In this document: positions 1 to 57,449 of the stretch, piece after piece
Position numbering within the stretch: position 1 is the first letter of the stretch
Layout of the letters: the number at the start of each line of letters is the position of its first letter
NCBI GenBank assembly: GCA_002269645.1
Contig: NIVC01003920.1
Coordinates: forward strand, 5,652 to 69,651
Direction: 5' to 3'
Source of the DNA: Macrostomum lignano
Lineage: Eukaryota
DNA length: 64,000 nt
The notes under the pieces: generated by a model
The model's input: only the letters and a program-made list of their open reading frames with translations
Told to the model about the DNA's origin: nothing
Databases searched by the model: none
Position numbers and translations under genes: made by a program

Positions 1-2326
1 GGGCGCCCACAAGGCGAGATGGACGCCTGGTGCACCTGGTGCCGAAGAGGTTTTTCGATTCGCAGTGGCTTCACTAACCTACGAAGTCACTCCTGCGCTG
101 CTAGTCATCGTTCAGTATCTGCGGCTCGAAATCTGCACTTGGGACCCTCATTAGAAATCCCAATGCAACTGCACTTGACGGCTCTGCCTCTGGCAGCGTC
201 ACTTTGTCATCAGCTGGCTTCGACCCCTGTTCTGCAGCTAGAGTATCAGAGGTCCGATGTGTTGCTCGAATTATTCTGAAAGCACAAAGCTTTCAATCTC
301 AGGAAGATATAGTTGATGATTTGGGAGCCATCTGCAACGACTCGAAGATACCAGCGAAGATGCAACTGCACGCAACTAAAATGACCTATCTAGTGACTGA
401 TGCCGTTTATCCACATATGCTCGATGTAGTGCTTGCCGACATTCGAGATGCCGAGTTCTATTCACTGCACATCGATGAAACAAATAACCAAGGGACCAAG
501 TATCTAGTTGTGGCACGCTACCTTCCACAGGATGCATTTGAGGTACGAGTTGTTTGCATTGGATTGCCATCTGTAGCTAGCACATCAACGGAGCACCTAT
601 CAAGCGCAGTGTTCGAGCTAGTTGCGAAGTGAGAAAAGAAACTGTCTGTCAATCATGATGGACAATTGCAACGTAATGTGAGGCGCAAAAAATGGTGTCG
701 TTGTTTGCCTAAAGACGGAGCTAGGCTTCGATAGCGTAGTTGATGTGGGTGGTTGCTCGTTGCGCCATGTCCACAATGTTGCAAAACATGCGTGTGCCGC
801 ATCAAAGCTTGGCCAAGATGTTGAGGTACTTGTCCGCGATATCTATTGCTTTTTTAAATATCACGAAAGTAAAAGCGAGCGCCTTGAAAAATTTCGCACC
901 GAATTTTCGGACATTAAAAAGCTTGCCTTCCTGCGCCCAATAGACACTCGTTGGCTGCAGACTCTAGCGGTTGTTGAGCGCGTCCGGGCTATGTTGAAGC
1001 CTCTTCTGCTTTACTTCACTGAAGTAAAGCCATCCAAGCATAACGTCCCCAAACATTCAAGCATCAAAGGCGCTCTGGAGGACTCTAAGACGGAGTTCTT
1101 CCTCTGCTTCCTAGCTGAGGTTTTAAAGCCGCTTCAGCAGTTTGAGCTCCTCTTCCAGCAGGAGGGATGTCATGTACAGAAGCTGTACAATAAGCTCACC
1201 GACATCATGAAGCGATGGCTTCTGCGCTTCGTCAAGCAGCAAAGTCTGCCCGAAAAGTTTTGGACGGTAGATGAGACAGACATTACGATTCAGCTATCGC
1301 CCTACCAGCTGGGTATTGGAGAGTCAGCCAGACGCCTTTTCAACAACATGGCAGCTGATGATCAGAAAGTTTGTCTGCAGTCTGTCGGAAATTTTTTGCA
1401 GTAGGTACGTCAAAGCTTCGTGAGTACCTGCCCTTCGGCAACAAGATTTTGCGCGCTTGCCAAGCCATGGACCCACAAAAGCAGTTGGATGCCCAAGCTG
1501 TTAACTGGGTTCGGATTCTGGCCCGTGGCTTGCCGAGAGTAGTTTCTGAAGATGTCTGCAGTCTTGAGGTTGAGATGCGACTGCATCGGCATGCCATTGA
1601 CCAGGCTGAGATTGAGGCCAACAAACCAACAGTCACTGAATTTTGGAGCGCTGTCGAGAAATCAGGTGACAGGAACTACTTGTTCGCCTGATTAGAGCAT
1701 TATTGGTGCTTCCGCCTGGCAATGCCGAGGTGGAGCGGATCTTTAGCAACCTTAAGGACGTCATGACAAAGAAACGCAGGAGTTTGGCTCCTACGACAAT
1801 CAATGCTTTGATTGTTGCAACCTCGTGTCTTCGAGTCAAGGGCTGGACAGCGGCGACACTTCCAGTCTCTTCTAGATTGCTAAACTTGTGCGCTAGTGCC
1901 AATGCCGCTTTTAAGCAGCGCCTGAAAGACGAACGAAAGGCGGAAGAAGTGGCGCAGCAGAAGCAACTGGAAGAGACGCTCCGGCTTGAAGTTCGATCTG
2001 AAAAAAAATCAAGCAAGACATTCAAAGACGTGGAAGAGGCTATTGAGAACTCAAAAAAGGAAATTGAGCGCGTATTGGAAAGGAAAGAATCGGCTCAGAA
2101 GCTGCTAGTAAAGGCACAGAAAGCTTCACAGTCTGAGGAGAAAAAGCTGGATGAGTTGAGGCGGCAGCATGAGAAGCTGCTCAAAAAAAGAGAGCAAGAG
2201 TCGCAGCGTGTGACCGACTCGGTGATCAAGCGTGCGGCAAGCGCTATGTCAGCTGAAAACAGCACTGCGTCTGTGTCTGACAATCTGCCCGAGTCTGTGA
2301 AGAAGAAGAAATTTCGGCTGAACTGA
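1..2326 (+). pseudogene. hAT transposase (ZBED/ZNF862-like), broken by stops and frameshifts
   Basis: N-terminal BED-like zinc finger WCTWCRRGFSIRSGFTNLRSH; YSLHIDETN catalytic-like motif; LRPIDTRWL; C-terminal dimerisation motif LPPGNAEVERIFSNLKDVMTKKRRSL; then a Lys/Glu-rich tail. Split over ORFs 19-279, 204-632, 745-1404, 1371-1691 and 1703-2326. Confidence 0.85.
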
Positions 2327-11700: not shown

Positions 11701-11952
11701 TCCATTTTTATACTTTGCTTTTTTATATTGCAATAAAACCTATAGAAATTGACATTGCACTTTAGTTACTACTTTAGCATAATTTTGCATATTATTAAAT
11801 TATTACAAGTATATCTTCATTTATATCTTTTTCAGAATTTTATATGCTTCCTTGTAAATGTTGTTCATCTTTGTAAGTAAATATTTAAATAGTTTTTTAG
11901 TCAGCTGTATTTGCTATATCATGCTCAGTTTCTCTTATGACTAACATTTTAG

Positions 11953-14900
11953 AAATTCATTGCAATTGTGGCAACATTTCTTCATTGTGCTACTGGAATG
12001 CAGGACTATAGCTCAGAAATGCCAAGTAGTAAGTATTGCAATATTTTCTATATTTTCAGCTTTTAAAATAAAGTTTTGAAATTTAAAGGACTGATATATC
12101 CAAGTTTTGAGTATAAATTATAATTCTCTGCTTAACTGTGTTGTGCTTTTTTGTTTGAATTTTTGGTCAATCCAGCTTGCTGTGTGAGATTTCAATTTCA
12201 GGGAAGTTAGTTTTTTTGTTACACACTAAATAACACAAGTGACAAAAAATCCATTTGTCAGTTTTGACCATCACTCCGCCATTTGCTCTGCTGGATCACG
12301 ATAAAACTGTGACCTTCAACTGCTCTGCTGCCGCTGTGGGACCGGCCATAGACTACAACAGAGTGACTGTGCAGTGCAACCGTCGGCCCCTGCCCATCAG
12401 CTGCCAGGCCAGCTACGCCCTGTATTATTCCAGTCACACCTGCAGCACCAGCCTGCTGGAGTCGGCCGACTGTCTCTGCGTGTCTAGCGGAGACCCATCT
12501 GGCAACTCAGCCGATGTGAAAGCTGCCGTGTCGCACGATGCTGCGATGTACATTGCGTGTAAGTTTTCCCGAAAAGTGCGATATTCGCTATATAAGGAAG
12601 CACCAAATTATCGATACCGAAATCCATTGCCTGCTGTGATTGGGTAGCAGCTGTGAGCTGCAGCTCACCCTGCTGTGATTGGATAGCAGCTCTGAGCTGC
12701 AGCTCACCCTGCTGTGATTGGGTAGCAGCTGTGAGCTGCAGCTCACCCTGCTGTGATTGGATAGCAGCTCTGAGCTGCAGCTCACCCTGCTGTGATTGGA
12801 TAGCAGCTCTGAGCTGCAGCTCACCCTGCTGTGATTGGACGGCAGCTCTGAGCTGCAGCTCACCCTGCTGTGATTGGATAGCAGCTCTGAGCTGCAGCTC
12901 ACCCTGCTGTGATTGGATAGCAGCTCTGAGCTGCAGCTCACCCTGCTGTGATTGGACGGCAGCTCTGAGCTGCAGCTCACCCTGCTGTGATTGGACGGCA
13001 GCTCTAAGCAATGTTAAGAATGCAGAGTAGGAATTGTGGTCCTCACAGTCTCAGCATCGCATTCGCCAGCAGCTAAAGCCGTGCACAGCCTTCAGTTTCG
13101 CCTTGCAGTGGCAGAGGCTCTGCCGTTGCCTGCACATCTGGCCACATTATTGAATTAGCATTCTATAAAGTATTTATTTACACTTCTGTAAAAATTATAA
13201 ATATCCATACATAAACGGATATAACAGATGGGTAAATAGGCAGATAGGCTATTTCAGCCTATTCTACGTGCAGAAGCAGGGCGCCCCACTCTTGGGGTTT
13301 TGCGTGCCCAGCAGCTCAGCTCGGCGTTTCTTCCGATTTCAGCGGCTCCGCAGTCGCCGCGCCTGGCCGCCTGCGAGTGGAACGAGAGCCTCGCCATGGG
13401 GTCGCCCTTCGTCTGCGAGCTGTGGCCCGGCCTGCTGGAGCTCGAGAGCCGCTCCGAGCTGCCTCTGAGAGCCGCCGAGCTTTCGCTAAACGTTAGCTTT
13501 AGCCACTGGTCAGCGACTCGGGTGTTTGTGCATGTCTAGTGCATGTCAGGGAACCTTCCCACCGAGTGAGGAACTCCCTACTCCAGTAAGAATTTTCCCA
13601 CCGAGAGGAACTCCCTACTCCAGTAAGAATTTTCCCACCGAGAGGAACTCCCTACTCCAGTAAGAATCTTCCCACCGAGTGAGGAACTCCCTACTCCAGT
13701 AAGAATCTACCCACCGAGAGGAACTCCCTACTCCAGTAAGAATCTACCCACCGAGAGGAACTCCCTACTCCAGTAAGAATCTTCCCACCGAGAGGAACTC
13801 CCTACTCCAGTAAGAATCTTCCCACCGAGAGGAACTCCCTACTCCAGTAAGAATCTACCCACCGAGAGGAACTCCCTACTCCAGTAAGAATCTTCCCACC
13901 GAGAGGAACTCCCTACTCCAGTAAGAATCTACCCACCGAGAGGAACTCCCTACTCCAGTAAGAATCTTCCCACCGAGAGGAACTCCCTACTCCAGTAAGA
14001 ATCTACCCACCGAGAGGAACTCCCTACTCCAGTAAGAATCTTCCCACCGAGAGGAACTCCCTACGCAAACTGCAGGGCAAACGGCTACACGTGGCAGCAG
14101 TGCGACATGAGCGGCGCGTCGGCAGCCCCCAGCATCCTGAATCGCTGCCCCACTGGCCAGTCCCTGTGCTGCGACTGTGACTCTGCAGCCGCGGCCGCTG
14201 CCTCCGCCAAACCGCAACGCTGCGTCTGGCTCGCTGCCGATTTCGAGGAGTTCGCCAACGACACCCTCCTGGTGCGCCTGGGCGTGTGCAACCGGCTGGG
14301 CTGGTGCAGCAGCAAGCAGCTGGTGCTGGACAGGTCCGACTACAGTGAGTGTTGGGTTTTGGACTGTTATTAAGCCTTTGCATTTGAGTTCGTGTTATTA
14401 CTATAAGTAGTAGTGTGAGCAATACAGAGCAAGAATTTTCGTGCTTCACCGATTAAACAATCCCCAGAGCGGCCCCTCCCGCTGCTCCTGAGGAACGTGA
14501 CCTTCGCGGTGAGCCCGACCGGTGACTCCGTGCTGGCTTGGCTGCTGCCGCTGCCGCAGCTGCACCACCTCACCACCGCCTTTGACACGGAGGTTTCGAT
14601 GACGGCTGGCAGTCATCTGCTCGCCCGAAACTCCACTCGAACAGTGTCGGCGCCGCTGAGCTTAGCCGTGCCGCCGCTGGCGACTTTGCAGTTCTGCGCC
14701 CGCCGGCGACCTGTCAATGGCCGGCACTGGAGCCAGCCGACCTGCTTGACTGCTCGCAGCCCACCCGCTCCGCTGCTGTGTCCGCCTGCTCAGGTTTAAC
14801 TGACATTTTGACTGTGCTCAGCCATATATGCCTATCTGCCATATATCTCGGACCTGCATGAATCCGTCTCGGACCTGCATGAATCCATCTTGGACCTGCA

Positions 14901-17900
14901 CGAATCCATCTCGGACCTGCATGAATCCATCTCGGACCCGCATGAATCCGTCTCGGACCTGCATGAATCCGTCTCGGACCTGCATGAATCCATCTCGGGC
15001 CCGCATGAATCCATCTCGAACCTGCATGAATCCATCTCGGACCTGCACGAATCCATCTCGGACCTGCATGAATCCATCTCGGACCTGCATGAATCCGTCT
15101 CGGACCTGCACGAATCCGTCTCGGACCTGCATGAATCCGTCTCGGACCTGCATGAATCCGTCTCGGACCTGCATGAATCCATCTCGGACCTGCACGAATC
15201 CATCTCGGACCTGCATGAATCCATCTCGGACCTGCATGAATCCGTCTCGGACCTGCACGAATCCGTCTCGGACCTGCATGAATCCGTCTCGGACCTGCAT
15301 GAATCCGTCTCGGACCTGCACGACTCGATCCTTTTTGCAACCGCATAAATAACTCCCGCTGGATGCCTGATCTCAGCTGCCATTCCGATTCCGCAGTCAT
15401 TCGTTGACGCAACCTGGCGCTATTTGTGGATCGGCATGTCGGAGCTCGGCTGCGTCTCCCACTCGGCCGAGGCCGCCGCCGCATCTGCAGCCGCCAATTT
15501 GTCGGCCTGTTCCCCGCCGCTGCCCGAATCCAGCGATCTCGTGCAGTGCCGCTGCGAGCGCTGGCCCGGCTACCTACAGCGCCACCCGGCGACCGCCGCT
15601 TGCCGTCAGCGACAGTCCGAGGGGCTCGGTGGCTCCTCGGCCAGTCAGCAGCCTGTAGCGAGTTGGTGCAGAAAAATTCAGCTTGATCCTCCTGAGTGAG
15701 CCTTCTCCACAGTACTGCATTGCTTTCGGGATCGCATGTAACCTGTTGAGCATGAGGGAGACCTGTTAAGCATGAGGGAGACCTGTTAAGCATGAGGGAG
15801 ACCTGTTAAGCATGAGGGAGACCTGCTAAGCATGAGGGAGACCTGTTAAGCATGATAGAGACCTGTTAAGCATGATGGAGACCCGTTAAGCATGAGAGAG
15901 ACCTGTTAAGCATGAGGGAGACCTGTTAAGCATGAGGGAGACCTGTTAAGCATGAGGGAGACCTGTTAAGCATGATGGAGACCTGTTAAGCATGAGGGAG
16001 ACCTGTTAAGCATGATGGAGACCTGTTAAGCATGAGGGAGACCTGTTAAGCATGAGGGAGACCTGTTAAGCATGATGGAGACCTGTTAAGCATGATGGAG
16101 ACCTGTTAAGCATGAGGGAGACCTGTTAAGCATGAGGGAGACCTGTTAAGCATGAGGGAGACCTGTTAAGCATGATGGAGACCTGTTAAGCATGATGGAG
16201 ACTTGTTAAGCATGAGGGAGACCTGTTAAGCATGAGGGAGACCTGTTAAGCATGAGGGAGACCTGTTAAGCATGAGGGAGACTGGAGGCGGCAGTCGCAG
16301 CCAGGGAGGAGACTCTAAGCTTCATCATTCCACCAGTCCCCGAGCACACATAGTGAGGCCAGTAGCCCAACTACAGTAAGTACCTTGGCTTGGAGACTAT
16401 TGGGTCTCTGCTACAGCTGTTATATCAACTCTGCCCAACTCCACAGCTCCAACGCCTCGTTGACGGGCTCCGGCCTGCCAGCCGCTTCGGGCCTCACTCG
16501 CCTGCAGCCGCTGCTGCTGCAGTGCCGCGGCGGCGGCTCCACCCCGCTGATTTCGGAGGACGGCGCTGCCTGCCAGTCCAACCGGCTGCTGCTGCTGCTG
16601 CGCGCCAACTCGTTGTGGCTCTCCGGCCCCCTGATGACGCTCAGCTGCTCAGCCGCTGCCAACCGGACCGCGGTGCGCGCCGTGGCTGCTGAATGCTGGG
16701 CAGCAGGCGGTGCCAACGCCCACCTGCTGTGCCTGTCGGTGTCCTCCGACTGCCTCCTGGAGGACGGCGGCCGCTTCCGCTGCCCGAGCTTGGCGTCTCT
16801 CGCCCGAGCTCTCGGCTGCCCCTTCGAGTCTCGAACCAGCGGCGCCGTCTTCCCCCCTTTGCTTCTGCCGCTGATTGTTGCCGTTCTTGTCTGCCCCATT
16901 CTGTTGCTGTTTTGCTTTGTGAGGAAAGAAGGTCGTCCCTGCCTGCGCCGGAATCCGCCAGTTCCTCCTGCCAGAGATTATGGGCCCGAACCTGGCTCTG
17001 AGGCCGATCGGGTTAGTCAGTTTGCACTTTTGTCCTGAGTTGCACTTTTACAGCTTGGATTTTGTTGTAGTCTGAGTTGGATTCTGTTGCAGTCTGAGTT
17101 GGATTCTGTTGCAGTCTGAGTTGGATTCTGTTGCAGTCTGAGCTGGATTCTGTTGCAGTCTGAACTGGATTCTGTTGCAGTCTGAACTGGATTCTGTTAC
17201 AGTCTGAACTGGATTCTGTTGCAGTCTGAACTGGATTCTGTTACAGTCTGAACTGGATTCTGTTGCAGTCTGAACTGGATTCTGTTGCAGTCTGAACTGG
17301 ATTCTGTTACAGTCTGAACTGGATTCTGTTACAGTCTGAACTGGATTCTGTTACAGTCTGAACTGGATTCTGTTGCAGTCTGAACTGGATTCTGTTACAG
17401 TCTGAGCTGCATTCTGTTGCAGTCTGAGCTGGATTCTGTTGCAGTCTGAGCTGGATTCTGTTGCAGTCTGAGTTGGATTCTGTTGCAGTCTGAACTGGAT
17501 TCTGTTGCAGTCTGAGCTGGATTCTGTTGCAGTCTGAGTTGGATTCTGTTGCAGTCTGAGCTGGATTCTGTTGCAGTCTGAGTTGGATTCTGTTGCAGTC
17601 TGAACTGGATTCTGTTGCAGTCTGAGCTGGATTCTGTTGCAGTCTGAGTTGGATTCTGTTGCAGTCTGAGCTGCATTCTGTTGCAGTCTGAGCTGCATTC
17701 TGTTACAGTCTGAGCTGGATTCTGTTACAGTCTGAGCTGGATTCTGTTGCAGTCTGAGCTGGATTCTGTTGCAGTCTGAGCTGGATTCTGTTGCAGTCTG
17801 AGCTGGATTCTGTTACAGTCTGAGCTGGATTCTGTTACAGTCTGAGCTGGATTCTGTTACAGTCTGAGCTGGATTCTGTTGCAGTCTGAGCTGGATTCTG

Positions 17901-18251
17901 TTGCAGTCTGCAGACAATTTGGGTTGCCTCTGAACTAAATGTGTCAGAAGGTCTGGGAGCGGCCAACTCAGAGCTCACGCAAACGTCACCCCGCAGGTGA
18001 ACTGCAGGTACTCGCTGTCCAACGTCGCCGGCTGGCACTCGGACCGCACGGAGTCCACGAGGGCCACGAAGGAAGCGGAGAGCCCCAATAGCCAGAGCAA
18101 GGCGCTGCGAATGGGTGAGGCTGCTGTGCTATGGAGGGTAGGCAGTGCCATGCATTGAGTCGGGCAGAGCTGATAATCTCATTAAACAATTTCGCACCTG
18201 GCAGAAATCGCAGAGGGCTACCAGCCCTGGTCGGAGCAGGGCGGCATTTGA
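11953..18251 (+). CDS. Multi-exon class I cytokine-receptor-like (gp130/Domeless-like) Ig/FN3 membrane protein; first exon not located
   Basis: Exons approximately 11953-12028 (signal-peptide-like KFIAIVATFLHCATG), 12262-12558 (Ig-like LTITPP...VTFNCSA), ~13259-13510, 14076-14344 (Cys-rich, VRLGVCNRLGWCSS), 14468-14793 (RPLPLLLRNVT...LQFCARRRPVNGRHWSQP, WSxWS-like), 15397-15695, 16337-16375, 16417-17011 (ends with hydrophobic LLLPLIVAVLVCPILLLFCFV then RKEGR..NPPVPPA), ~17914-18115, 18205-18251 (EIAEGYQPWSEQGGI*). Several junction phases match; the exon structure at 12560-13510 and 17914-17997 is uncertain. Confidence 0.55.
12631..13006. repeat. 39-bp minisatellite, ~9.5 copies, intronic
   Basis: Unit CAGCTCACCCTGCTGTGATTGGATAGCAGCTCTGAGCTG. 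Confidence 0.95.
13556..14063. repeat. 37-bp minisatellite, ~13 copies, intronic
   Basis: Unit ACCGAGAGGAACTCCCTACTCCAGTAAGAATCTTCCC; ends 12 nt before the acceptor at 14075. Confidence 0.95.
14845..15325. repeat. 21-bp minisatellite, ~23 copies, intronic
   Basis: Unit ATCCGTCTCGGACCTGCATGA. Confidence 0.95.
15741..16283. repeat. 20-bp minisatellite, ~27 copies, intronic
   Basis: Unit ACCTGTTAAGCATGAGGGAG. Confidence 0.95.
17059..17910. repeat. 22-bp minisatellite, ~38 copies, intronic
   Basis: Unit GGATTCTGTTGCAGTCTGAGCT, each copy with an acceptor-like TTCTGTTGCAG; runs into CTGCAG at 17913. Confidence 0.95.
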
Positions 18252-19105
18252 GAAGTGGCGTCTGCTGAACACAGAACCGATTTCAGAAGCTCAAGAATGC
18301 TTGCCTTCGGGAGCCCCAACAGTCATTTCTCTGTGTTTAATCAATTTAATCAATTTTTTATCGAATTTCATAGCCCGTTTTTCAGGCGGGTGTTTTTTAA
18401 ATAAATTCTTTACAGCCCAGTAGTTTTATTATTCATTAGCATCGAAATCTAAACAAAAACTGTACACCGCCATTCTGAAGTATTGATTTTTGCATTTTGC
18501 TCTTTGTTGTCACAGAAGTCTTCAATGAATGCATGAATTATTTACTGCCTGATTTTGGCCGTCAGTTCGTATTAAGGTGCGATGTATATTTACACTGCAA
18601 TGAGTCTGATTCGAATCTCTAAGCACTTGTTTTTACTTTTTACACCCATCATGCCCTCGGTGTTGTCCTGTGTCTGTTGTAATTCGCTGGCTTGCAGACA
18701 GCAGCACTTCAATTGCATTTTCCCACTGCCTGTTCACGAGCTCCCGCTGACCCGGAGTCATTGAATTGAATGCCTTTGTTTGTTGCAATTTCTGCTTTCA
18801 TTTTCCCTGGACTCAGTGGTCCCATTAATGGCTCACTGCATGACTCATTGTGAAATCGCTTCAATTGAGCTCAAGTTATCTCTAATCCGTTTGTTAGTCC
18901 GAATTTATTCTCAAATGGTCTGATTTTCTGGCATCCACAGTAAGTCAATTAAAACCGTGTACAGCGGCCTGCTGGCTTCAATCCATACAGCTGCTGCTGC
19001 CATCAAATGAGGCAAATTTCTGCGTGATCCCACGGCTTGCTCATCTTTTCCCAGGTGATTTGGCGGCTCAATTGATGGCGGTTTGAACGCGACTTTGCTC
19101 ACCAC

Positions 19106-19531
19106 CAAGGTTGGGCGAGTATTGGCCGGGGTTCAGCTACTTCCGAGTACCGAGCAGTCTAACCCAGGGCCAGGGGTAACCGAGTACCGAGCTAGCAGTC
19201 TAACCCAGGGCCAGGGGTAACCGAGTACCGAGCTAGCAGTCTAACCCAGGGCCAGGGGTAACCGAGTACCGAGCTAGCAGTCTAACCCAGGGCCAGGGGT
19301 AACCGAGTACCGAGTGCAAAAAGACAAAATCAAAAGCGTACTGAACTGTTCAGTTTTATCTTCAACGTTTTAAAAGTTGATTTCCTACTGCCTTTTCTAG
19401 GAAGCAAAATCGAGAATGTTACTCTTAAGGTTTTAATCCCACCAGTCGAGACAAAACTTGACAGTTCAGTTGCGAATTGTTGTTTTTTTGTGCTTGCTCG
19501 TACCGTACACGTCAAAACACGCCCACCCCTA
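19106..19531. mobile_element. Possible degenerate hAT-type MITE with an internal 41-bp tandem array (19143-19315, ~4 copies)
   Basis: Imperfect TIR CAAGGTTGGGCG versus CGCCCACCCCTA; only a partial 8-bp TSD match. Unit TAACCCAGGGCCAGGGGTAACCGAGTACCGAGCTAGCAGTC. Confidence 0.35.
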
Positions 19532-19654
19532 GGTCATCACTCAGTAACTGCAAACTAAATATAACCACTTGCCTGCACTCGTCTTGTTTGGTTTGAAATC
19601 CACCTATACTAAATGTCTAAGATTTGTCTGTCCATTTCATATACTAAAATTCAT

Positions 19655-20995
19655 ATGATGGGTTTTGACCTTTCAGGCCCCTTGTGGGGAAGCCTTCGGG
19701 CCTCAGGTCTCAGAAATAAATCAATTAGAGTCCTGGCCCCCCACTCCTGTCAGATGGTCAGCCCCATGGTAGCTTGATCGTGTGGCGAGCAGTCTAGGTC
19801 CTATAGCTAAGAGAGGGACAGCGAGAGACAAGCAGGGAGAATTCTGAAGGTAGAAATTAGCTAATCCGCAGACTAAGCTAACTCGCTGCCACCAGCCCGT
19901 GCGTCCTGGCTCACCACACCGGGACTCTCGAAATCGGGCTTCCGACTAGAAGGGGCTTTGCACTTACCTGCCAACTAGTGTCTTTTTGCTGTCTATCTCG
20001 AAGTCATAGCCGATGATAAGGGACACTGCTGGGACTAGATCGCATTGGCCATGCAGGTACAGAGGGGACTTGTGCAGGGGATTCTTGCAGTGGCGAGTCT
20101 ATGGGGTAGCTACATGTACTATTACATTGCTAAATACGAAGATATGTACTTTTGGCCTTCAACGCGCCAACTAGCCTCTCATAGCGCTGATGATAGACTA
20201 ACTCGAACTTCAGAGACCGCATGATTCAGTACCCGAGCCGCTTGGCGAACCTGGAGTGCACAAAGTACATCTCCGGCGCCGATTTTGCACTATTGGCAAT
20301 TTTTGCTCACCGATTTGGTAGATCGATCGACTGAGAACTGCCTTGCCATTGGTCCACTGTGACCGGCGCCTACTAGCTTAGCTACTCATCTGAACCATTG
20401 GCGAACAAAGAAATAAAACCGATAAAAATAACTGTCAGATTTAACCTTCTCCTTAAATCACTTCACACTTCAGATCGAATTCAGTTTTTCAGTAGTTTCA
20501 GACTACTAGCAGTATTCTTGAATGACTTCTGCCTCAGCAACAGCACTACTGAACAAACTGAGCTAAAGTGTGCGCCTAATCCAGCTACTGAAACAGGGGA
20601 CAGATAGGGGGTCACCCAATCAAGCAAGTCTAGGTAGCCTCTCACCCAACCAATCAGAAACTCAACAGCCGGAGACCAGGTAATCCACAGTGACCGAATC
20701 GGATTGATGCTTCGCAGCTGTAGACTCGGGATGATGCTGACACAATCCACCTGCGCCTGACACAACTGAGTGAGGCGCAGGTGGCTGTCAGATAAACTTT
20801 GAAAGCGATGATTTACGACCCAAAAAGCTGCGCCTGTTATTATGACTACTAGTATGACCAAACATTATATCTAGTACAGATTCTATGACAATTCGCAGAA
20901 AAAGAATAAAAATGCCCTTAGCCTGCTGTCAGTAGGCTAGTAAGTTTAGAGCCCATGTGCTAGCGCGGGATTTGGGAAAAAGTGCGTCCTCATCA
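19655..20995 (-). repeat. Dispersed ~1.3 kb unclassified repeat, copy A (inverted relative to copy B)
   Basis: Reverse complement aligns by eye to 61276-61507 plus 62183-63258, with long near-identical stretches. Confidence 0.9.
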
Positions 20996-21849
20996 CATAC
21001 CTAAATATCTACTGAGTCTATTTATCAAGTGCTGCATGCACAGTATAGCACCGTGCTGCTTTGTTGAGGAAGCGTTTGCCGTTAGGGAACGCTGTGCATG
21101 CTCTGATCTGAGGATTTTAACCTAACTTTATTATTAACTTTAAACTAATAAAACTACTATATGATTAGAACAGGCCCTGCTCAAGGCATGTACGTAGAGT
21201 GTCTAGTTAGCATCTGGGACACTGTTCTCATTCTTAACTTTCACTTTCTTAACTTCGTGAATCGTTTTTTGTAAGGATTTTTGAAAATGACACTCATTTG
21301 TGCCATGATGTATCAGCATTAGAAGCAATGAATTCAAAATTGGACACATGTGCAATTTTATTAATGACTACGCAAGGCACTAGCCTCTGAACTAGCAGTA
21401 TGTATTAGCGATTAGCTAGAGAAGCTAAATGCTTAACGAACTCGAAACCGCAGTAGCGATCGCACAGGACAAAAAAGCAGCAAAGCGGTAAGCAAATTTG
21501 TAAAACAGAGAAGCGAATGAAAAGTCGATCAAGAGCGAAACTCCTGCAGGCGAAACAATGAAGCCTCTCGGGTTTGGGCAAAATTGAACAGCATTTTGAC
21601 TGAAATGACAAGCAACATCCGTCTAAATTGTGATCTGCTGCATAGGGCAGCGCAGATTGTTAAGGCAATTTAAAAAGCAGACTGCAACTATAAGCGAGGC
21701 ATTTCGTTTCTGAGCATTCTGAGTAACCGACTGCAGATGTAGCTAACAGCTTATGCAGCTCGCGAGTCGCTTAATTTGATCAGTTATTTTATCTGCTTGA
21801 GTCAGCTGGCCACCACAGGCCGTTACTGCGGAACCCCCATCCGTTCCGC

Positions 21850-24800
21850 TCACTCCCTCTTCTTGTCGGTGGCCGCCTTCTTTGGGGCGCCGTTTGCGGC
21901 GGCTCCCGCGCTGCCGTCCGTCGCTACGACTGGAGCAGCCGAAGGAGGACGGCTTGCGGCGCCACCTTGCCGGAACAGGCCGCTTATGGCGTCCGCCAGA
22001 CCGCCGAACAGCAGGGCGCCCGCTAGCCATTCGAACGGGTAGAACGGGTCCATCGGGCCCAGCAGCTTGACGGCCAGCCTGCGGATTGGGGGAGAGATTT
22101 TTCAGCAATGTGATTCACCCACCAACCAAATTCGCCACAGGCATTCACCCACCAACCAAATTCGTCACAGGCATTCACCCACCAACCAAATTCGTCACAG
22201 GCATTCACCCACCAACCAAATTCGTCACAGGCATTCACCCACCAACCAAATTTGTCCCAGGCATTCACCCACCAACCAAATTCGTCACAGGCATTCACCA
22301 ACCAACCAAATTCGTCACAGGCATTCACCCACCAACCAAATTCATCACAGGCATTCACCCACCAACCAAATTCGTCACAGGCATTCACCCACCAGTACCA
22401 GCAAACAAATTTGTCACAGGCATTCACCTACCAGTACCAGCTAACAAATTTGTCACAGGCATTCAACCACTAGACCCAGATATGCAACTGTCACAGGCTT
22501 TTACCTAAGCAGGACAAAGAAGGCCGCAGCGCCCAGATAGACGTGATTGTGATACTGAGCAGGCAGGTGGCCCGTGTGCTCCATTAGAAAGACGATAGCC
22601 ACAACAAGGCAAGCCTTGGTGGTGCTGAAATTCGAAGATGGGAATGAAGTAAGTAACGAGCATTGGTGTCGCATTAAGGGATTATCAAATATTTATCTTG
22701 ACAGAATGCACCATAACAGATCGCAGCATTTCTGCTTATGCACACAGATAGGGCGCTAAAAATGAGACTTCACACGAACCCAAAATGGGAAGGCAATGGC
22801 GTGCTGTGTAACTAAGTGGCTGTGCGAACTAAAAATCTAAAAGCTAAAAAAGCAACCCTGAAGCTGCTGAACTACTCAGAGTGAATCAAGCCACTGCAGT
22901 TCAGCACGGCAGGACATTCTGCTGTCTCTTACGCAGAGGGGCGCAGCATTTCGCTGACACCCGGCAGCCAGACTCCGCGTATTAGCCGCTCAAACAGCTT
23001 CATCTCGGCCGAGCCGGAGCCTTGAAAATGTTTCACGGGTGAATGAAAAGCGATGCTAGGAAAATCAAAGTGCGCCACTATGAGTAGTTTGCACCGCATC
23101 TTTAAATGGGTTGCTTTGATTTGCTAGCGATAGATAATGCTAAAGCGACCTGCAGGTACCAAGGCGGATGCCTTGACCATTTCTGCTGCTGTAAAAGCCT
23201 TTTAAAATTTTTAATCACTGAAGGTCCGAAGTCTGATGATGAATCTGAATTTTCAATCTAAACTCAAGTGCTCGATATACTTTGACAACACACAGAGGCT
23301 CAGAAAGATCAACAGATCAAAGATCAGTTTTACGTTCAAAATCTGACCTGGGCTATCGTTGAACATCTTAACATTTTTTAAGGCTGCGGACTAGAAAACA
23401 AAAGTTATGCCCACCTTTATGGAACGTAGCGAACCTGCACTGTTAGGGTGCAGCAGCAAAAATGTCTCCTAATCCGACTTGGAGATACAGGAGGGCTTGA
23501 AAAGCGCCAGTGTTCCTAACTGGCAACCAACACATGTGCTATGTTAATCAGGTGAGATTCTGATACAAAAAGGCAATCTAATAGTCGCCAGGTGAGATCG
23601 GTTAAACATATTCAGCGAGCTAGCTCAGATGATTGAATAAAAAAAATCGGTAAGACTTTCGTGCCGGACGAAAAAGGGATAAAAATAACATTAAATCATC
23701 GTTCTCTATACGAAAAAAATTGCACAATATACATGTACTACTAAAATAGCATTAAAGAAAGCAAGGAGAAAACAAAAGACCGGTAAGAGTTTAGAATTAG
23801 CCATATTAAAAGCCTTCAATGTGATTAAACGCACTATTAAACTATCGCGATATTTCATGGCTTTTAGTGCAAAATGAAACGAAACCGCATAGCAACACAG
23901 AGGAAGCCCCCGCCTGCAAATACCGAAGGCCTTACACTGAGAATGCTCCCACAATGGGCGGACGGAACTGGCCGGTGACGAGGCGGGCGAACAGCAGCAT
24001 CACCGGGCTGCCGTTGGCTTATCAGCGCATGGATGAAGGAAATTCGGCAGGTGAGTTCAAATTAGTCATGCACTACAAGCAGGTGTTGATGGGCGGCCAG
24101 ATATGCGTTCGTACGGTACTAATCGGAGGAAAATGCACCAACACGGCTAGAACTTGAACTTTAACGATGCTAAATGCCAGTCAGCGGTGCCCCTGCCTCT
24201 ACCAGCCAGTCAGCTAAGCTAAAAATAGACGTAATCGAACAGCCGAAGCTGCCGCAGACTGCTGCAAAACTGCAGTGGCGTCCGCCAAAGCCATCAAGAT
24301 GAACCGCAGCCATTAAAGTACGCAGACCGCAATGGCGAGGGAGGCAAAGCTGAAGGGAAGATGCACGGAGGGATCGAATCCGCCTGCGAATTCCGCAATG
24401 ATGGGAGAACTTGAGGGATTTGGGAAGTTAACTGCGGGCAGCCGCTCCCCTCCTGCTGCGCTCTTGAAGCGGCAAGTCAGCAGGCAATCAATTCCCCCCT
24501 GGCTGGCCAATGGCTGCTTCTAGCTGCAGAAATTGCTGCTTCCGTGTCCGCGGGGCTCGTTTCGCTTTGATTTCCTTGAAGCGAGCGATCGCAGGAAAGT
24601 GGATGGCGGGGAGCCTCCGCTTCTGCAGAGCGCTGATAAGGTCAAGACAAACGGGCTCGTAACAAACAGAAACAGGCAGAGTCCCGGAGGCAGGGAAGGG
24701 TTTGGGTGAAGTTTCTTCCAAATAAGGCCAACCCAGTTCGCAACAATGAGGCAGAGGCTGGCCAGAGAGCAGACCAGAAACCCTTAATTACAGCCATACA

Positions 24801-26213
24801 AATTACGCATTCATTTTTATCTTGCGACACTGAAGTAATCAGCAGTGAGCATCGAACACGCATGCCAGTCCCATTCATAGGCCTACCTTTCACAAGGCCG
24901 ATGAGTACATTGAGCAAGTAGGCCTGGGGGTAAAGCCGAACGCCTGCAGCCACTCCATCAAAGACTTTCCGTGTTCTCTGAATTTCTTTTAAAAGGCAGA
25001 CAGCCAGATGGACAGGTGCAAACTTAGCTAATTTGTAGACTAGGTCAAAGGGTGCATAGTTGAGGACATACCTGTAAACAGTGTATATTAATGTTGTAAA
25101 AAATTAAAATAAATACTTTCCTTAGATCATTTTAGTAATATCTCGCTAAGCCCATTGAAACAAAATTTCTACACTTAACACCAAATTTGATAAGTAAATA
25201 AGCTTATATGCACAGAATTAACTAGCATTGAAATTAATTTGGAATACTTTAACTAGGTAGTACTGATAACAGTAATAAAAGGAAAAATGACAAGCATCTA
25301 AATACAAACAAGAACAGAAGCTTAAAAAACACAAAATAACTTACCATACAATTGTTGCCACCAGAATGTCTCTATGGTTTTGAAAGGGCACAATTAGTGG
25401 TTCACCAGTCAAGCCATTACCAATTATAGTGCCTGCAAAGCACATTAGCATGCTTGCTAGCCAAGATGCAAATGAGTGATGTCTTGAAAATGTTGGTGTA
25501 CCTGAAAAATTAATAAGCATTTTATTAATTTTTAGGTATGTTTTATAAATTCTTTAAAATGTTTTCAAGCAGGTTTTACAATAGAATAATAAAACAATTT
25601 TATTACATAGGCCTAAAAACACAAATAAGCAAATGTAGGCTTAATTCATAATATATTGAGCAAATATATAATTGTGAAATCATTTTAATTTGTTTTAAAA
25701 TTAATAAGGTCAATAATAAGGTCAATAATATATTGAGCAAATATATAATTGTGCAATCATTTTAATTTGATTTTTTAGTCAAATGTTTTGATAATTGATA
25801 TCATTGATTAATAAATGAGATTAGCCTATACAAAGATTTTGGCTTTGCCTATAAGGAAATATGTAGATTGTAGGCCGACTATGCAGCAATATAAATGCTA
25901 AGTGCTCTTATATTGTTCTTAGTGCATAATAATGCTCATTGCAATCGTTTTTAATAGTCCCATGCTTTTAATATTTTGGGACATGTTTATCCAAGCTTTA
26001 CAAGAAATTATTATAAATTTAAATTCTAAGCAATAAAAAGGTTTACAAGAAAAAAATCTTTTCATCAAGCTCACCAAGTTGAGGAGTATCTTCCTTAACA
26101 AGCAAACACATCAAAATATAATGTGATATGTCGAAAAATGGATACATATTAATTCGCTGTAATGTTTTAGATACATCACTGAACGGGAAATAGTAGTCCA
26201 GATCCAAATCCAT
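21850..26213 (-). CDS. TMEM38: Trimeric intracellular cation channel (TRIC/TMEM38 family), 6 coding exons, 305 aa
   Basis: Exons 26213-26075, 25501-25345, 25071-24887, 23020-22933 (4B), 22624-22505, 22078-21850. All GT-AG, phases consistent, 918 nt total. Motifs MYPFFDISHY, SWLASMLMCFAG..GNGLTGEP, WYVLNYAPFD, LKEIQRTRKVFDGV, LYPQAY..IGLVKGSG, LFERLIRGVW, TKACL, DPFYPFE..LFGG, Lys-rich tail. Confidence 0.93.
22107..22470. repeat. 30-bp minisatellite, ~12 copies, in the last TMEM38 intron
   Basis: Unit GGCATTCACCCACCAACCAAATTCGTCACA. Confidence 0.95.
23936..24017 (-). CDS. TMEM38: Alternative exon 4A of TMEM38 (candidate mutually exclusive exon)
   Basis: 82 nt, AG|...|GTAAGG, phase 1 to phase 2 like exon 4B. 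Encodes (A)NGSPVMLLFARLVTGQFRPPIVGAFS, homologous to 4B (G)SGSAEMKLFERLIRGVWLPGVSEMLRPS. Confidence 0.65.
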
Positions 26214-26989
26214 AATAGCAATGAAAGTCGTGCTCCTCTAAACGTTCGAAAGACTAAGAAGCCGAAAAGGACGAAAAAGTCCGAATATGAGAAATTATCG
26301 CGCAAGTCAAGTTTGCCAGCGTATCGTCAATCAAAACAAGCCCACAGTCATAATCGTGAAAAACGAACAACGATTTTTATGCTTATTGCAGTACTTAGGA
26401 ACGAGTTGATAGTCAATTTTAAAGTTCAAATCGTTAATCGTATAGTCGGATCTTTGGCTAGGTTTGACTTTTAATGTCGAAAAATGTAAAAAAATGAGAA
26501 ATTGAGGCTGTAAAAATTTGAGTCGTACCAATAAGCCGTACAAGCATACTAATCATCAGTTAGCACAAGATCGACCTATGATGTAGTTTACAATTACTCC
26601 TAATCGGTTGTGGTGAAATCGTCCTCTTCTCTAAGTATTAGTCGCCTTAGAGCAGGGACAGCGTTGTCGAAGCGAATCAATTGCATCGGCAAAGAACAGT
26701 GACTGACTCTGATGCACTGCAGCTGAGTGCATGTGAGTCCCGATTATCTGCGTTGGCGGCAGAATTGCTTTAAGCGAGTGAAGACAGCGAAGTCCAACGG
26801 AGCTATGTCAATGTAGGCCTCGGGTATATATATGGTGGGTGTGGCAAGAACTTCAGGCAACCAGAGCTTCTTAAGTCGTCTGGCTCTCTACATGTTTTGC
26901 ATGGGCATGGCGTTGTGATGGTGTCATGTCAACGCAGTGTCTGTGTGTGACCTCCAAACCTCTCGTTGCTGATGTCTCGCCGATTGAAG

Positions 26990-54940: not shown

Positions 54941-57449
<2,509 letters not shown>

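What the first reader, a model, noticed from the sequence alone, without database searches (positions are those of the whole stretch)
11953..18251. Candidate invertebrate gp130/Domeless-like cytokine receptor
Seen: signal peptide, Ig-like exon, Cys-rich FN3-like exon ending VRLGVCNRLGWCSS, a second FN3-like exon starting RPLPLLLRNVT and ending GRHWSQP, more FN3-like exons, a 21-residue hydrophobic stretch, then RKEGR..RR, PPVPP and a tail with tyrosines. Known: class I cytokine receptors have a two-FN3 module with a WSxWS motif and a proline-rich Box1 that binds JAK. Inference: a highly diverged JAK/STAT receptor, a class poorly catalogued outside arthropods and chordates.
Basis: partly seen in the sequence, partly recalled or inferred. 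Interest (0 to 1): 0.7.

Follow-up and report, generated by a model that had tools for sequence, protein, structure and literature searches.

The report
Divergent cytokine-receptor-like gene in a flatworm
This is a real, transcribed gene of the flatworm Macrostomum lignano for a single-pass membrane glycoprotein whose outer part looks like a very diverged cytokine-binding module of the gp130 type, but nothing shows that it signals through JAK/STAT.

Summary
The window is Macrostomum lignano DNA. My 10-exon model (11858-18251, + strand, 725 aa) is identical to the RNA-seq-guided public protein PAA49287.1, annotated only as hypothetical.

Standard homology methods see nothing: no Pfam match, no relative outside M. 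lignano among 1.8 billion representative proteins, no hhalign or HMM signal against gp130, and AlphaFold pLDDT of 34-38. The WSxWS motif and the strict cytokine-receptor cysteine signature are absent.

Gene structure tells another story. After a 297-nt phase 1-1 exon, exons 4, 5 and 6 have the phases of the gp130 cytokine-binding exons (1-2, 2-1, 1-0). The phase-2 intron splits the same Trp codon (TG|G GCA) in both genes. Exon-anchored alignments are significant only for the matching pairs: exon 4 z about 5, exon 5 z about 4.

The low-confidence model of exons 4-6 hits cytokine-receptor two-domain modules in 37 of its top 50 PDB matches.

The cytoplasmic tail is short (84 aa). It has PPVPP but no YxxQ and no significant similarity to Box1.

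Verdict: a probable diverged cytokine-receptor-homology ectodomain. JAK/STAT coupling is unproven.

The parts
11858..11872 (+). Exon 1: ATG plus 4 codons (MLFIF), start of the signal peptide; phase 0 out
   Evidence: identical to PAA49287.1
11953..12028 (+). Exon 2: rest of the signal peptide (KFIAIVATFLHCATG...); phase 1 out
   Evidence: hydrophobic N-terminus
12262..12558 (+). Exon 3: 297 nt, phase 1-1, 99 aa with 6 Cys. It has the size and phase of an Ig-domain exon (the gp130 Ig exon is 306 nt, phase 1-1), but no sequence similarity to it.
   Evidence: UniRef calls the protein 'Ig-like domain-containing'. No Pfam match.
13343..13508 (+). Exon 4: 166 nt, phase 1-2. Candidate first half of the N-terminal cytokine-receptor-homology domain. 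It reads S-A-P-Q-S-P-R-L-A-A-C(140)-x13-C(154)-E-L-W-P-G ... N-V-S-F-S-H and ends TG| inside a Trp codon.
   Evidence: (rank 1 of 671 windows)
14076..14344 (+). Exon 5: 269 nt, phase 2-1. Candidate second half of the N-terminal domain. It starts |G GCA (W-A), then C194-x14-C209, a Cys/Ala-rich insert of about 34 aa, and ends LLVRLGVCNRLGWCSSKQLVLDRSDY.
   Evidence: (rank 1 of 636 windows)
14468..14793 (+). Exon 6: 326 nt, phase 1-0. Candidate C-terminal domain in a single exon. It reads KRPLPLLLRNVTF..SVLAWLLP..STRTV..LQFCARRRPVNGRHWSQP. It keeps only one WS and has no WSxWS.
   Evidence: z 1.4-2.4; z 2.0-3.3 against the first half of gp130 D3; not significant
15397..15695 (+). Exon 7: 299 nt, phase 0-2, 99 aa with 6 Cys; no recognisable domain
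   Evidence: The duplicated copy g1 has a 1-bp deletion here, at window position 15621.
16447..17011 (+). Exon 8: membrane-proximal Cys-rich ectodomain (8 Cys), membrane span (nt 16847-16921), stop-transfer RKEGR, and PPVPP (nt 16955-16969); phase 2-0
17997..18114 (+). Exon 9: cytoplasmic tail (VNCRYSLSNVAGWHSDRTESTR...)
18205..18251 (+). Exon 10: end of the tail (EIAEGYQPWSEQGGI) and the TGA stop
12630..17910 (.). Five intronic minisatellite arrays, not part of the protein: 12630-13009 (39-bp unit), 13551-14064 (37), 14845-15320 (21), 15741-16282 (20), 17056-17910 (22)

Best explanation
The locus is the expressed M. lignano gene Mlig033348.g2. It encodes a 725-aa type I membrane glycoprotein.

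Proposed architecture: an Ig-sized N-terminal domain (exon 3); a strongly diverged two-domain cytokine-receptor-homology-like module (exons 4+5 as the N-domain with two Cys pairs, exon 6 as the C-domain with WSxWS decayed to a single WS); a Cys-rich region of about 230 aa with no known counterpart (exons 7-8); one membrane span; and an 84-aa tail.

Shown: the exon chain, the topology, the shared intron phases and split Trp codon with gp130, and the exon-specific sequence similarity.

Inferred: it sits on the cell surface and binds a secreted protein ligand at the junction of the two module domains, as cytokine receptors do. Ligand binding would bring it together with itself or a partner chain.

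The tail is short, has no kinase domain and no STAT-docking YxxQ. The output most likely depends on a partner protein. That partner could be a cytosolic kinase or adaptor docking at the membrane-proximal PPVPP and the three tail tyrosines. Alternatively the protein could be a ligand-binding or regulatory chain, like IL-6R alpha or Drosophila Latran, rather than a gp130-like STAT-recruiting chain.
For: 1. Gene model. My model is identical to an RNA-guided public model.

2. Gene structure. I derived the gp130 exon structure here from the Nannospalax locus: signal exon (ends phase 1), Ig exon 306 nt (1-1), 121 nt (1-2), 167 nt (2-1), 155 nt (1-0). This gene has: signal exons (end phase 1), 297 nt (1-1), 166 nt (1-2), 269 nt (2-1), 326 nt (1-0). 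Both genes split TG|G GCA (Trp-Ala) at the phase-2 intron. In both, the first Cys is residue 11 of the 1-2 exon, with Pro at residues 3 and 6 and a basic residue at 7.

3. Exon-anchored global alignment against shuffles.
- Exon 4 vs gp130 exon 3: z=5.2 with 0/20000 shuffles (human); z=2.5-2.8 (platypus, turtle).
- Exon 5 vs gp130 exon 4: z=3.9-4.2, with 5-12/20000 shuffles.
- Of the other 81 pairs, only gp130 exon 5 vs exon 4 (z 2.6-3.0, both N-terminal halves of FN3 domains) and the colinear pair gp130 exon 5 vs exon 6 (z 2.0-3.3) exceed |z|=2.5, under three gap settings.
- The signal survives masking of Cys and Trp (z 2.7-4.3).

4. Sliding windows. Among all windows of the protein, the one that equals exon 4 exactly ranks 1/671, and the one that equals exon 5 ranks 1/636. 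No translated segment elsewhere in the 64-kb window reaches these scores (0/3312 and 0/1570).

5. Fold search. The AF2 model of aa 148-384 is nearly all beta. Its best PDB matches by Foldseek are cytokine-receptor modules: ranks 1-19, and 37 of the top 50, including EPOR, gp130, IL-10R beta, IL-23R, PRLR, TpoR, IL-11R alpha and CRLF3. The poorer 471-aa model gives unrelated hits.

6. Topology. Signal peptide, nine sequons all extracellular, and one membrane span followed by RKEGR.
Against: - No Pfam family matches at E<=10, for the whole protein or exon by exon.
- phmmer against the PDB finds only marginal antibody V-domain hits to exon 6 (E 0.04-1.2).
- hhalign against a gp130 alignment finds only 10 columns at the end of the membrane span (probability 0.2%).
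- gp130 domain HMMs score no better on the segments than on shuffles.
- The strict signature C-x9-10-C-x-W-x26-32-C-x10-15-C is not met. The observed spacing is C-x13-C-xx-W-x36-C-x14-C. A pattern loosened to fit it occurs in 5.6% of shuffled ectodomains.
- WSxWS is absent.
- Exon 6 vs gp130 D3 is weak (p 0.015-0.09), and exon 6 ranks only 39/617 in its own scan.
- Both AF2 models are low confidence (pLDDT 34.5 and 38). All Foldseek E-values are >=0.025 and TM-scores about 0.2.
- Only gp130 was available as a comparator, so the test rests on one family.
- I noticed the exon correspondence first and tested it afterwards.
Confidence: 0.65

Rival explanations
1. It is a lineage-restricted Cys-rich, Ig-superfamily-like membrane glycoprotein (an adhesion or recognition molecule) with no evolutionary relation to cytokine receptors. 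The shared phases and local similarities would be coincidence or generic beta-sandwich features.
For: - No relative outside M. lignano in an exhaustive HMMER scan of 1.84 billion representatives with aa 1-471, nor in word-indexed searches with the whole protein and with the C-terminal 230 aa.
- No Pfam match, no hhalign or HMM signal.
- The best PDB sequence hits to exon 6 are antibody V domains.
- UniRef labels the protein, and a fragment containing only exons 8-10, as 'Ig-like domain-containing'.
- Phase-1 exons are common in genes for extracellular domains (general knowledge).
Against: - The signal is specific to the cognate exon pairs and absent for 81 other exon pairs, apart from a weaker one between gp130 exon 5 and exons 4 and 6.
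- The best-scoring windows coincide exactly with the exon boundaries.
- The phase-2 intron splits the identical Trp-Ala codon pair.
- Foldseek hits are cytokine receptors rather than the far more numerous antibodies.
Confidence: 0.25
2. It is a full JAK/STAT signalling receptor. PPVPP would be a working Box1 that holds a JAK. Tail tyrosines phosphorylated by JAK would recruit a STAT.
For: - The ectodomain evidence given for the best explanation applies here too.
- PPVPP lies 12-16 residues after the membrane span. The gp130 motif WPNVPDP lies 11-17 residues after it.
- The phase-0 intron after this region falls 27 residues after the juxtamembrane FCFVRKE, against 28 residues after FCFNKRD in gp130.
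- In a free scan, the best window for the gp130 Box1 exon is aa 640-692, directly after the membrane span. However z=4.3 is within the scan background.
- The tail has three tyrosines.
- JAK, STAT and SOCS exist in another lophotrochozoan, Mytilus, where the receptor was still unknown in 2012 (PMC3308963).
Against: - The tail and the gp130 Box1 exon are no more similar than shuffles (z=-0.05 to 0.34).
- P(x)PxP within 25 residues of the membrane occurs in 3.5% of shuffled tails.
- The strict Box1 pattern (aliphatic-P-x-P) and PxxPxP are not met. There is no YxxQ or YxxV in the tail and no Box2-like cluster.
- The tail is only 84 aa.
- The S. mansoni tyrosine-kinase family table lists no JAK (PMC3135232).
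- JAK and STAT in M. lignano could not be checked.
Confidence: 0.2
3. It is a decaying or non-functional gene copy, whose open frame and transcripts do not reflect a working protein.
For: The duplicated copy g1 (contig NIVC01001368.1) carries a 1-bp deletion in exon 7 that truncates the product to 471 aa without a membrane span. The gene has no detectable orthologues.
Against: The copy in this window has an intact 2178-nt frame over 10 exons, with canonical splice sites at all nine introns, and it is part of an RNA-guided annotation. Outside exon 2, the two copies differ in their exons by only three substitutions and that single indel, which may equally be an assembly error in a G run.
Confidence: 0.03

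Closest known systems
gp130 (IL6ST)-type 'tall' class I cytokine receptors (Ig - CHD - FN3 - TM - Box1)
   Same: - The order signal peptide, Ig-sized exon, two-domain module, membrane span, proline motif.
- Exon phases 1-1 / 1-2 / 2-1 / 1-0, with the phase-2 intron in the same TG|G GCA (Trp-Ala) codon pair.
- Two Cys pairs, one in each half-exon of the N-domain.
- P-x-x-P-basic-x-x-x-C at the start of the module.
- K/R-P-x-P...N-x-T/S at the start of the second domain.
- A membrane span ending LFCF followed by charged residues.

   Different: - No WSxWS, and Cys spacings outside the family signature.
- An insert of about 34 aa, rich in Cys and Ala, in the N-domain.
- The second domain sits in one exon and ends in phase 0.
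- No recognisable FN3 stalk; instead about 230 aa of Cys-rich sequence.
- An 84-aa tail, against about 277 aa in gp130 (own knowledge), with no Box2 or YxxQ.
- No similarity visible to HMMER or hhalign.
Drosophila Domeless and its short paralogue Latran (Eye transformer)
   Same: Both are invertebrate single-pass receptors with a cytokine-binding module followed by a region of about 200 aa not found in vertebrate receptors (PMC2914635). Latran has a short tail without STAT-binding sites, as here. From my own recollection, not checked here, Dome also has an incomplete WSxWS.
   Different: The Dome module is encoded by a single exon (PMC1963337), whereas here it is split as in gp130. Dome has three FN3 repeats before the membrane. 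No sequence comparison with Dome or Latran could be made here.
Non-signalling alpha chains (IL-6R alpha, IL-11R alpha, CNTFR alpha)
   Same: Ig domain plus cytokine-binding module plus stalk, with a short tail or none. IL-11R alpha and CNTFR alpha are among the Foldseek hits.
   Different: Those chains keep WSxWS and the canonical cysteines. Their stalks are short and not Cys-rich. Their partnership with a gp130-type chain is established, whereas no partner is known here.
Class II cytokine receptors (e.g. IL-10R beta)
   Same: A two-FN3 module without WSxWS. IL-10R beta is the top Foldseek hit. From my own recollection, the D200 exon phases are shared with class I.
   Different: Class II receptors do not have two Cys pairs in the N-domain. 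No exon-level comparison was made here.

Membership tests
Class I cytokine receptor (gp130/Domeless type) | Type I single-pass topology with a signal peptide | tested here: met
   Hydrophobic N-terminus; one 25-residue span at aa 617-641 followed by RKEGR; all nine N-x-S/T sequons on the N-terminal side.
Class I cytokine receptor (gp130/Domeless type) | N-domain signature C-x(9-10)-C-x-W-x(26-32)-C-x(10-15)-C (PMC1963337) | tested here: not met
   The strict pattern is absent. The observed pattern is C140-x13-C154-xx-W157-x36-C194-x14-C209. This has the same order and the same distribution over the two half-exons, but three spacings are out of range. A pattern loosened to fit it occurs in 5.6% of shuffles.
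Class I cytokine receptor (gp130/Domeless type) | WSxWS motif at the C-terminal end of the second FN3 domain | tested here: not met
   No WS.WS and no relaxed version. There is a single WS in G-R-H-W-S-Q-P, at the position that global alignment pairs with the first WS of gp130.
Class I cytokine receptor (gp130/Domeless type) | Two tandem FN3-type folds forming the binding module | tested here: inconclusive
   No Pfam fn3 match. AF2 pLDDT is 34.5 and 38. The second model is nearly all beta and its Foldseek hits are cytokine-receptor modules in 37 of the top 50, but E>=0.025 and TM is about 0.2.
Class I cytokine receptor (gp130/Domeless type) | Conserved exon structure of the module, as in gp130: 1-2, 2-1, 1-0, 0-1 | tested here: inconclusive
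   The 1-2 and 2-1 exons and the phase-1 entry into the second domain match, and the phase-2 intron splits the same Trp codon. The second domain is not split, and it ends in phase 0 instead of 1.
Class I cytokine receptor (gp130/Domeless type) | Sequence similarity to family members beyond chance | tested here: inconclusive
   Negative by Pfam, phmmer, hhalign and domain HMMs. Positive in exon-anchored global alignments: exon 4 z about 5, exon 5 z about 4, both specific to the cognate pairs.
Class I cytokine receptor (gp130/Domeless type) | Membrane-proximal Box1 that binds JAK | tested here: inconclusive
   PPVPP lies 12-16 residues after the span. The strict aliphatic-P-x-P and PxxPxP patterns are not met. 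There is no similarity to the gp130 Box1 exon beyond shuffles. Binding itself cannot be tested with these tools.
Class I cytokine receptor (gp130/Domeless type) | STAT-docking tyrosine motif (YxxQ) in the tail of signalling chains | tested here: not met
   The tail tyrosines are in RDYGPE, CRYSLS and EGYQPW. There is no YxxQ or YxxV in the tail.
Class I cytokine receptor (gp130/Domeless type) | JAK and STAT present in the same genome | not testable with these tools
   Only a 64-kb window of the genome is available. The S. mansoni tyrosine-kinase table lists no JAK family (PMC3135232). The M. lignano supplementary tables held are partial and uninformative.
Immunoglobulin superfamily | A recognisable Ig domain (Pfam/PROSITE) with a B-F disulfide and a core Trp | tested here: inconclusive
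   No Pfam Ig family matches. Exon 3 has the size and phase of an Ig exon but no similarity to gp130 D1 (z about 0). UniRef names the protein 'Ig-like domain-containing', which is the source's own label.

The most novel reading that the evidence does not exclude
This is a bona fide JAK/STAT-coupled cytokine receptor of a flatworm. It would be the receptor class still missing from lophotrochozoan catalogues, diverged so far that only intron positions and exon-anchored comparison reveal it. The same approach could then uncover hidden cytokine receptors in other spiralians.
Probability: 0.2. Interest if true: 0.75.

Novelty: new variant of a known kind. Interest (0 to 1): 0.55.

Why it matters
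Class I cytokine receptors are well described in vertebrates, tunicates and insects. In lophotrochozoans the receptor that would activate JAK was reported as still undiscovered, even where JAK, STAT and SOCS are present (Mytilus, PMC3308963).

A flatworm gene that keeps the gp130-type exon structure of the cytokine-binding module would show two things. First, the module predates the split of these lineages in its intron-bearing form. Second, receptors of this class can escape every routine annotation method.

It would also give a concrete candidate for receptor-level studies in M. lignano, a regeneration model that can be made transgenic. If the resemblance is coincidental, the gene is simply one of many lineage-restricted membrane proteins.

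Tried and rejected
- **Pfam.** The whole protein and each exon segment at E<=10 gave nothing.
- **phmmer against PDB sequences.** Only marginal antibody V-domain hits to the end of exon 6. I considered a V-set Ig reading of exon 6 and left it as unproven.
- **Homologue searches.** The full-length search, the exhaustive HMMER scan with aa 1-471 and the C-terminal search returned only M. lignano copies. One repetitive junk hit (P0003) was rejected.
- **A kinase domain.** P0002's UniRef name ('Protein kinase domain-containing') prompted a look downstream. The translation of 18001-26500 shows no kinase. P0002 is a frame-shifted model of the same gene, so this was rejected.
- **Internal repeats** between exons: none. 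**Paralogues in the window:** none.
- **hhalign and local domain HMMs against gp130:** no signal.
- **Conservation between the two gene copies as a test of constraint:** uninformative, because introns are as similar as exons.
- **Literature searches for JAK/STAT in flatworms.** These gave only the S. mansoni kinase table. The supplementary tables of M. lignano papers are partial.
- **AlphaFold with a cytokine-receptor alignment as a guide.** I did not run this, because it would bias the result towards the hypothesis.
Full report
**What is there**

The region is eukaryotic: GC-rich exons separated by introns with GT-AG ends. Five of the introns are largely filled by tandem minisatellites.

Chaining the open segments through canonical splice sites gives a 10-exon gene on the + strand. 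The exons are 11858-11872, 11953-12028, 12262-12558, 13343-13508, 14076-14344, 14468-14793, 15397-15695, 16447-17011, 17997-18114 and 18205-18251. The frame is 2178 nt and encodes 725 aa.

A protein search identified the organism as the flatworm Macrostomum lignano. A cluster look-up returned GenBank PAA49287.1 (BOX15_Mlig033348g2, 725 aa, contig NIVC01003920.1). It is identical to my model over its whole length and spans exactly 6394 nt, as 11858-18251 does.

That annotation was produced from RNA-seq and a genome-guided transcriptome (PMC5730564). The exon chain is therefore independently supported, including the exon with the hydrophobic stretch and PPVPP.

**The protein**

It has the following features:
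- a hydrophobic signal peptide;
- an ectodomain of about 590 aa with 33 cysteines and all nine N-glycosylation sequons;
- one membrane span (aa 617-641);
- a stop-transfer RKEGR;
- an 84-aa tail containing PPVPP (aa 653-657) and three tyrosines.

A second, 98%-identical copy of the locus (g1, L001) reflects the known duplication of this genome. That copy has a 1-bp deletion in a G run of exon 7, which truncates its product to 471 aa.

**Routine homology methods find nothing**

- Pfam gives no family at E<=10, for the whole protein or for any exon segment.
- phmmer against PDB sequences gives only marginal hits of the end of exon 6 to antibody heavy-chain V domains (E 0.04-1.2).
- An exhaustive HMMER scan of 1.84 billion representative proteins with aa 1-471 finds only M. 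lignano copies and one junk repeat.
- Word-indexed searches with the full protein and with the C-terminal 230 aa also find only M. lignano.
- The family signature quoted in PMC1963337 is not matched, and neither is WSxWS.
- I collected real gp130 sequences and aligned 18 of them. hhalign against the M. lignano alignment gives only 10 columns at the end of the membrane span (probability 0.2%). HMMs of the six gp130 ectodomain domains score no better on the segments than on shuffles.
- AlphaFold on single sequences gives pLDDT 34.5 (aa 1-471) and 38 (aa 148-384).

**Gene structure changes the picture**

I derived the exon structure of a gp130 gene from its locus (Nannospalax galili, L003). The spliced translation reproduced the protein exactly.

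| Segment | gp130 | This gene |
|---|---|---|
| Signal exon(s) | ends in phase 1 | ends in phase 1 |
| Ig or Ig-sized exon | 306 nt (1-1) | 297 nt (1-1) |
| First module exon | 121 nt (1-2), with the first Cys pair and C-x-W | 166 nt (1-2), with C140-x13-C154-E-L-W |
| Second module exon | 167 nt (2-1), starting W-A, with the second Cys pair | 269 nt (2-1), starting W-A, with C194-x14-C209 |
| Next exon(s) | 155 nt (1-0), starting VKPNPP.NLTV, then 160 nt (0-1), with WSDWS | 326 nt (1-0), starting KRPLPLLLRNVTF |

The phase-2 intron interrupts the same codon pair in both genes. In gp130 it reads GAG TG|gtaagg...tttag|G GCA. Here it reads CAC TG|gtcagc...ctgcag|G GCA.

In both 1-2 exons the first Cys is residue 11, with Pro at residues 3 and 6 and Lys or Arg at residue 7.

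The correspondence stops after that. The second domain here is in one exon and ends in phase 0, 18 residues after HWSQP.

**Testing the correspondence**

I had noticed this by eye, so I tested it with global alignments anchored on exon boundaries (BLOSUM62), against composition-preserving shuffles.

- Exon 4 against the cognate gp130 exon gives z=5.2 (0 of 20000 shuffles, human). With platypus and turtle it gives z=2.5-2.8.
- Exon 5 against its cognate gives z=3.9-4.2 (5-12 of 20000).
- Exon 6 against gp130 D3 gives z=1.4-2.4.
- In a matrix of 14 gp130 exons against six exons of this gene, under three gap settings, the three highest values are always the colinear pairs: 4.5-5.1, 3.4-4.4 and 2.0-3.3. 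Only gp130 exon 5 against exon 4 comes near (2.6-3.0); both are N-terminal halves of FN3 domains. Everything else lies within about +/-2.5.
- Masking all Cys and Trp leaves z=2.7-4.3.
- Sliding windows give a null made of natural sequence. Of 671 windows of 55 aa in the protein, the one that is exactly exon 4 scores best. Of 636 windows of 90 aa, the one that is exactly exon 5 scores best.
- None of 3312 and 1570 windows from other stop-free translations of the 64-kb window reaches these scores.
- Exon 6 does not stand out in that test (rank 39 of 617).
- A free scan over window lengths shows background maxima of z 3-4.5. Only gp130 exon 3 (starting exactly at aa 130) and the membrane-span exon exceed that background.

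**Fold evidence is weak but points the same way**

The 237-aa model (aa 148-384) is predicted to be almost entirely beta. Its strands include those that align with the F and G strands of gp130 D2 and D3.

Against 350,542 PDB chains, its Foldseek matches at ranks 1-19, and 37 of the top 50, are cytokine-receptor two-domain modules of class I and II. They include IL-10R beta, EPOR, gp130, OSMR/LIFR complexes, IL-23R, PRLR, TpoR, IL-11R alpha, CNTFR alpha and CRLF3. Seven more of the top 50 are other FN3 domains and only one is an antibody chain.

The scores are poor: E 0.025-0.4, TM about 0.2. The tool warns that low-confidence models give meaningless matches, and the 471-aa model, which is mostly coil, does give unrelated hits. 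I therefore count this as suggestive only.

- The juxtamembrane sequence and the gp130 Box1 exon are no more similar than shuffles (z -0.05 to 0.34).
- A P(x)PxP within 25 residues of the membrane appears in 3.5% of shuffled tails.
- The strict Box1 patterns, YxxQ and YxxV are all absent from the tail.

Two coincidences are noted but not weighed heavily. First, PPVPP lies at the same distance from the membrane as WPNVPDP in gp130. Second, the next intron is phase 0 and falls 27 residues after the juxtamembrane FCFVRKE, against 28 residues after FCFNKRD in gp130.

JAK and STAT could not be searched for in M. lignano. The tyrosine-kinase family table for Schistosoma mansoni lists no JAK (PMC3135232). 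In Mytilus, JAK, STAT and SOCS are present and the receptor was unknown in 2012 (PMC3308963).

**Interpretation**

The most likely reading (about 0.65) is a strongly diverged cytokine-receptor-homology ectodomain on a lineage-restricted type I membrane protein. On this reading:
- the N-domain is reasonably supported;
- the C-domain is weakly supported and has lost WSxWS;
- exons 7-8 (about 230 aa, Cys-rich) have no known counterpart, a situation reminiscent of the Lat-Dome homology region after the Drosophila module (PMC2914635);
- the short tail suggests a ligand-binding or regulatory chain, or coupling through a partner, rather than a gp130-like STAT-recruiting chain.

Coincidental resemblance in an unrelated Cys-rich, Ig-like protein remains a serious rival (about 0.25). 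Full JAK/STAT coupling has a probability of about 0.2.

By the family's own definition, two defining features were tested and not met: the strict Cys signature and WSxWS. I therefore do not file it as a member. I describe it as a new, diverged variant of that kind of receptor.

**Limits**

- Only gp130 served as comparator.
- The exon correspondence was seen before it was tested.
- No orthologues exist to build an alignment.
- No confident structure was obtained.
- Function, ligand and signalling are inferred.

Noticed in passing
window 12630-13009, 13551-14064, 14845-15320, 15741-16282, 17056-17910: Five of the gene's nine introns are 48-91% filled by one tandem minisatellite each, with unrelated units of 39, 37, 21, 20 and 22 bp. 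Every array begins 42-71 nt after the donor site. The duplicated gene copy (L001) has the same arrays at the same places, but copy number differs in four of the five (for example 38.9 vs 30.9). Fourteen more rows of arrays occur elsewhere in the window.
   Followed up: partly
window 15621 (exon 7); L001 about 13660: The 98%-identical second copy of the gene (BOX15_Mlig033348g1) lacks one G of a G run. Its annotated product therefore ends after 471 aa, without the membrane span. This could be a soluble form, a decaying copy or an assembly error.
   Followed up: partly
window 11955-12012 (exon 2): Almost all coding differences between the two gene copies are concentrated in the signal-peptide exon: 8 substitutions and a 6-nt insertion in 76 nt. 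Exons 3-10 differ by two substitutions and the one indel.
   Followed up: no
window 34405-37966 (+), 29503-31145 (+): There is an LTR-retrotransposon-type pol region with aspartyl protease, reverse transcriptase, RNase H and integrase in consecutive ORFs. Upstream of it lies a second, fragmentary reverse-transcriptase ORF.
   Followed up: partly
window 204-2326 (+): ORFs here show a weak hAT-family dimerisation-domain match. This is probably a remnant of a hAT transposase.
   Followed up: no
window about 21850-26213 (-): The next annotated gene downstream, on the opposite strand, encodes a 305-aa TRIC-type cation channel (PF05197; L002 19993-24356).
   Followed up: no
window 42913-43467 (+), 50542-50997 (+), 56874-57446 (-): These are exon-sized ORFs of other genes: the start of a class C GPCR seven-helix domain (7tm_3), a fibronectin type II domain, and the FAD-binding N-terminus of a dihydrolipoamide-dehydrogenase-like oxidoreductase.
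   Followed up: no
window 20481-20861 (-) and 62078-62470 (+): Two ORFs in opposite orientation, 41 kb apart, encode nearly the same peptide (...SLQL.SI.PIRSLWIT..SPAVEFLIGWVRGYLDLLDWV...). This is a dispersed repeat of unknown type.
   Followed up: no
P0002, P0007 (UniRef A0A1I8JR51, A0A1I8FWQ5): Older UniRef entries for fragments of this same gene carry the names 'Protein kinase domain-containing' and 'PKD_channel domain-containing'. Their sequences do not justify these names: they are frame-shifted or partial models from an earlier assembly.
   Followed up: partly
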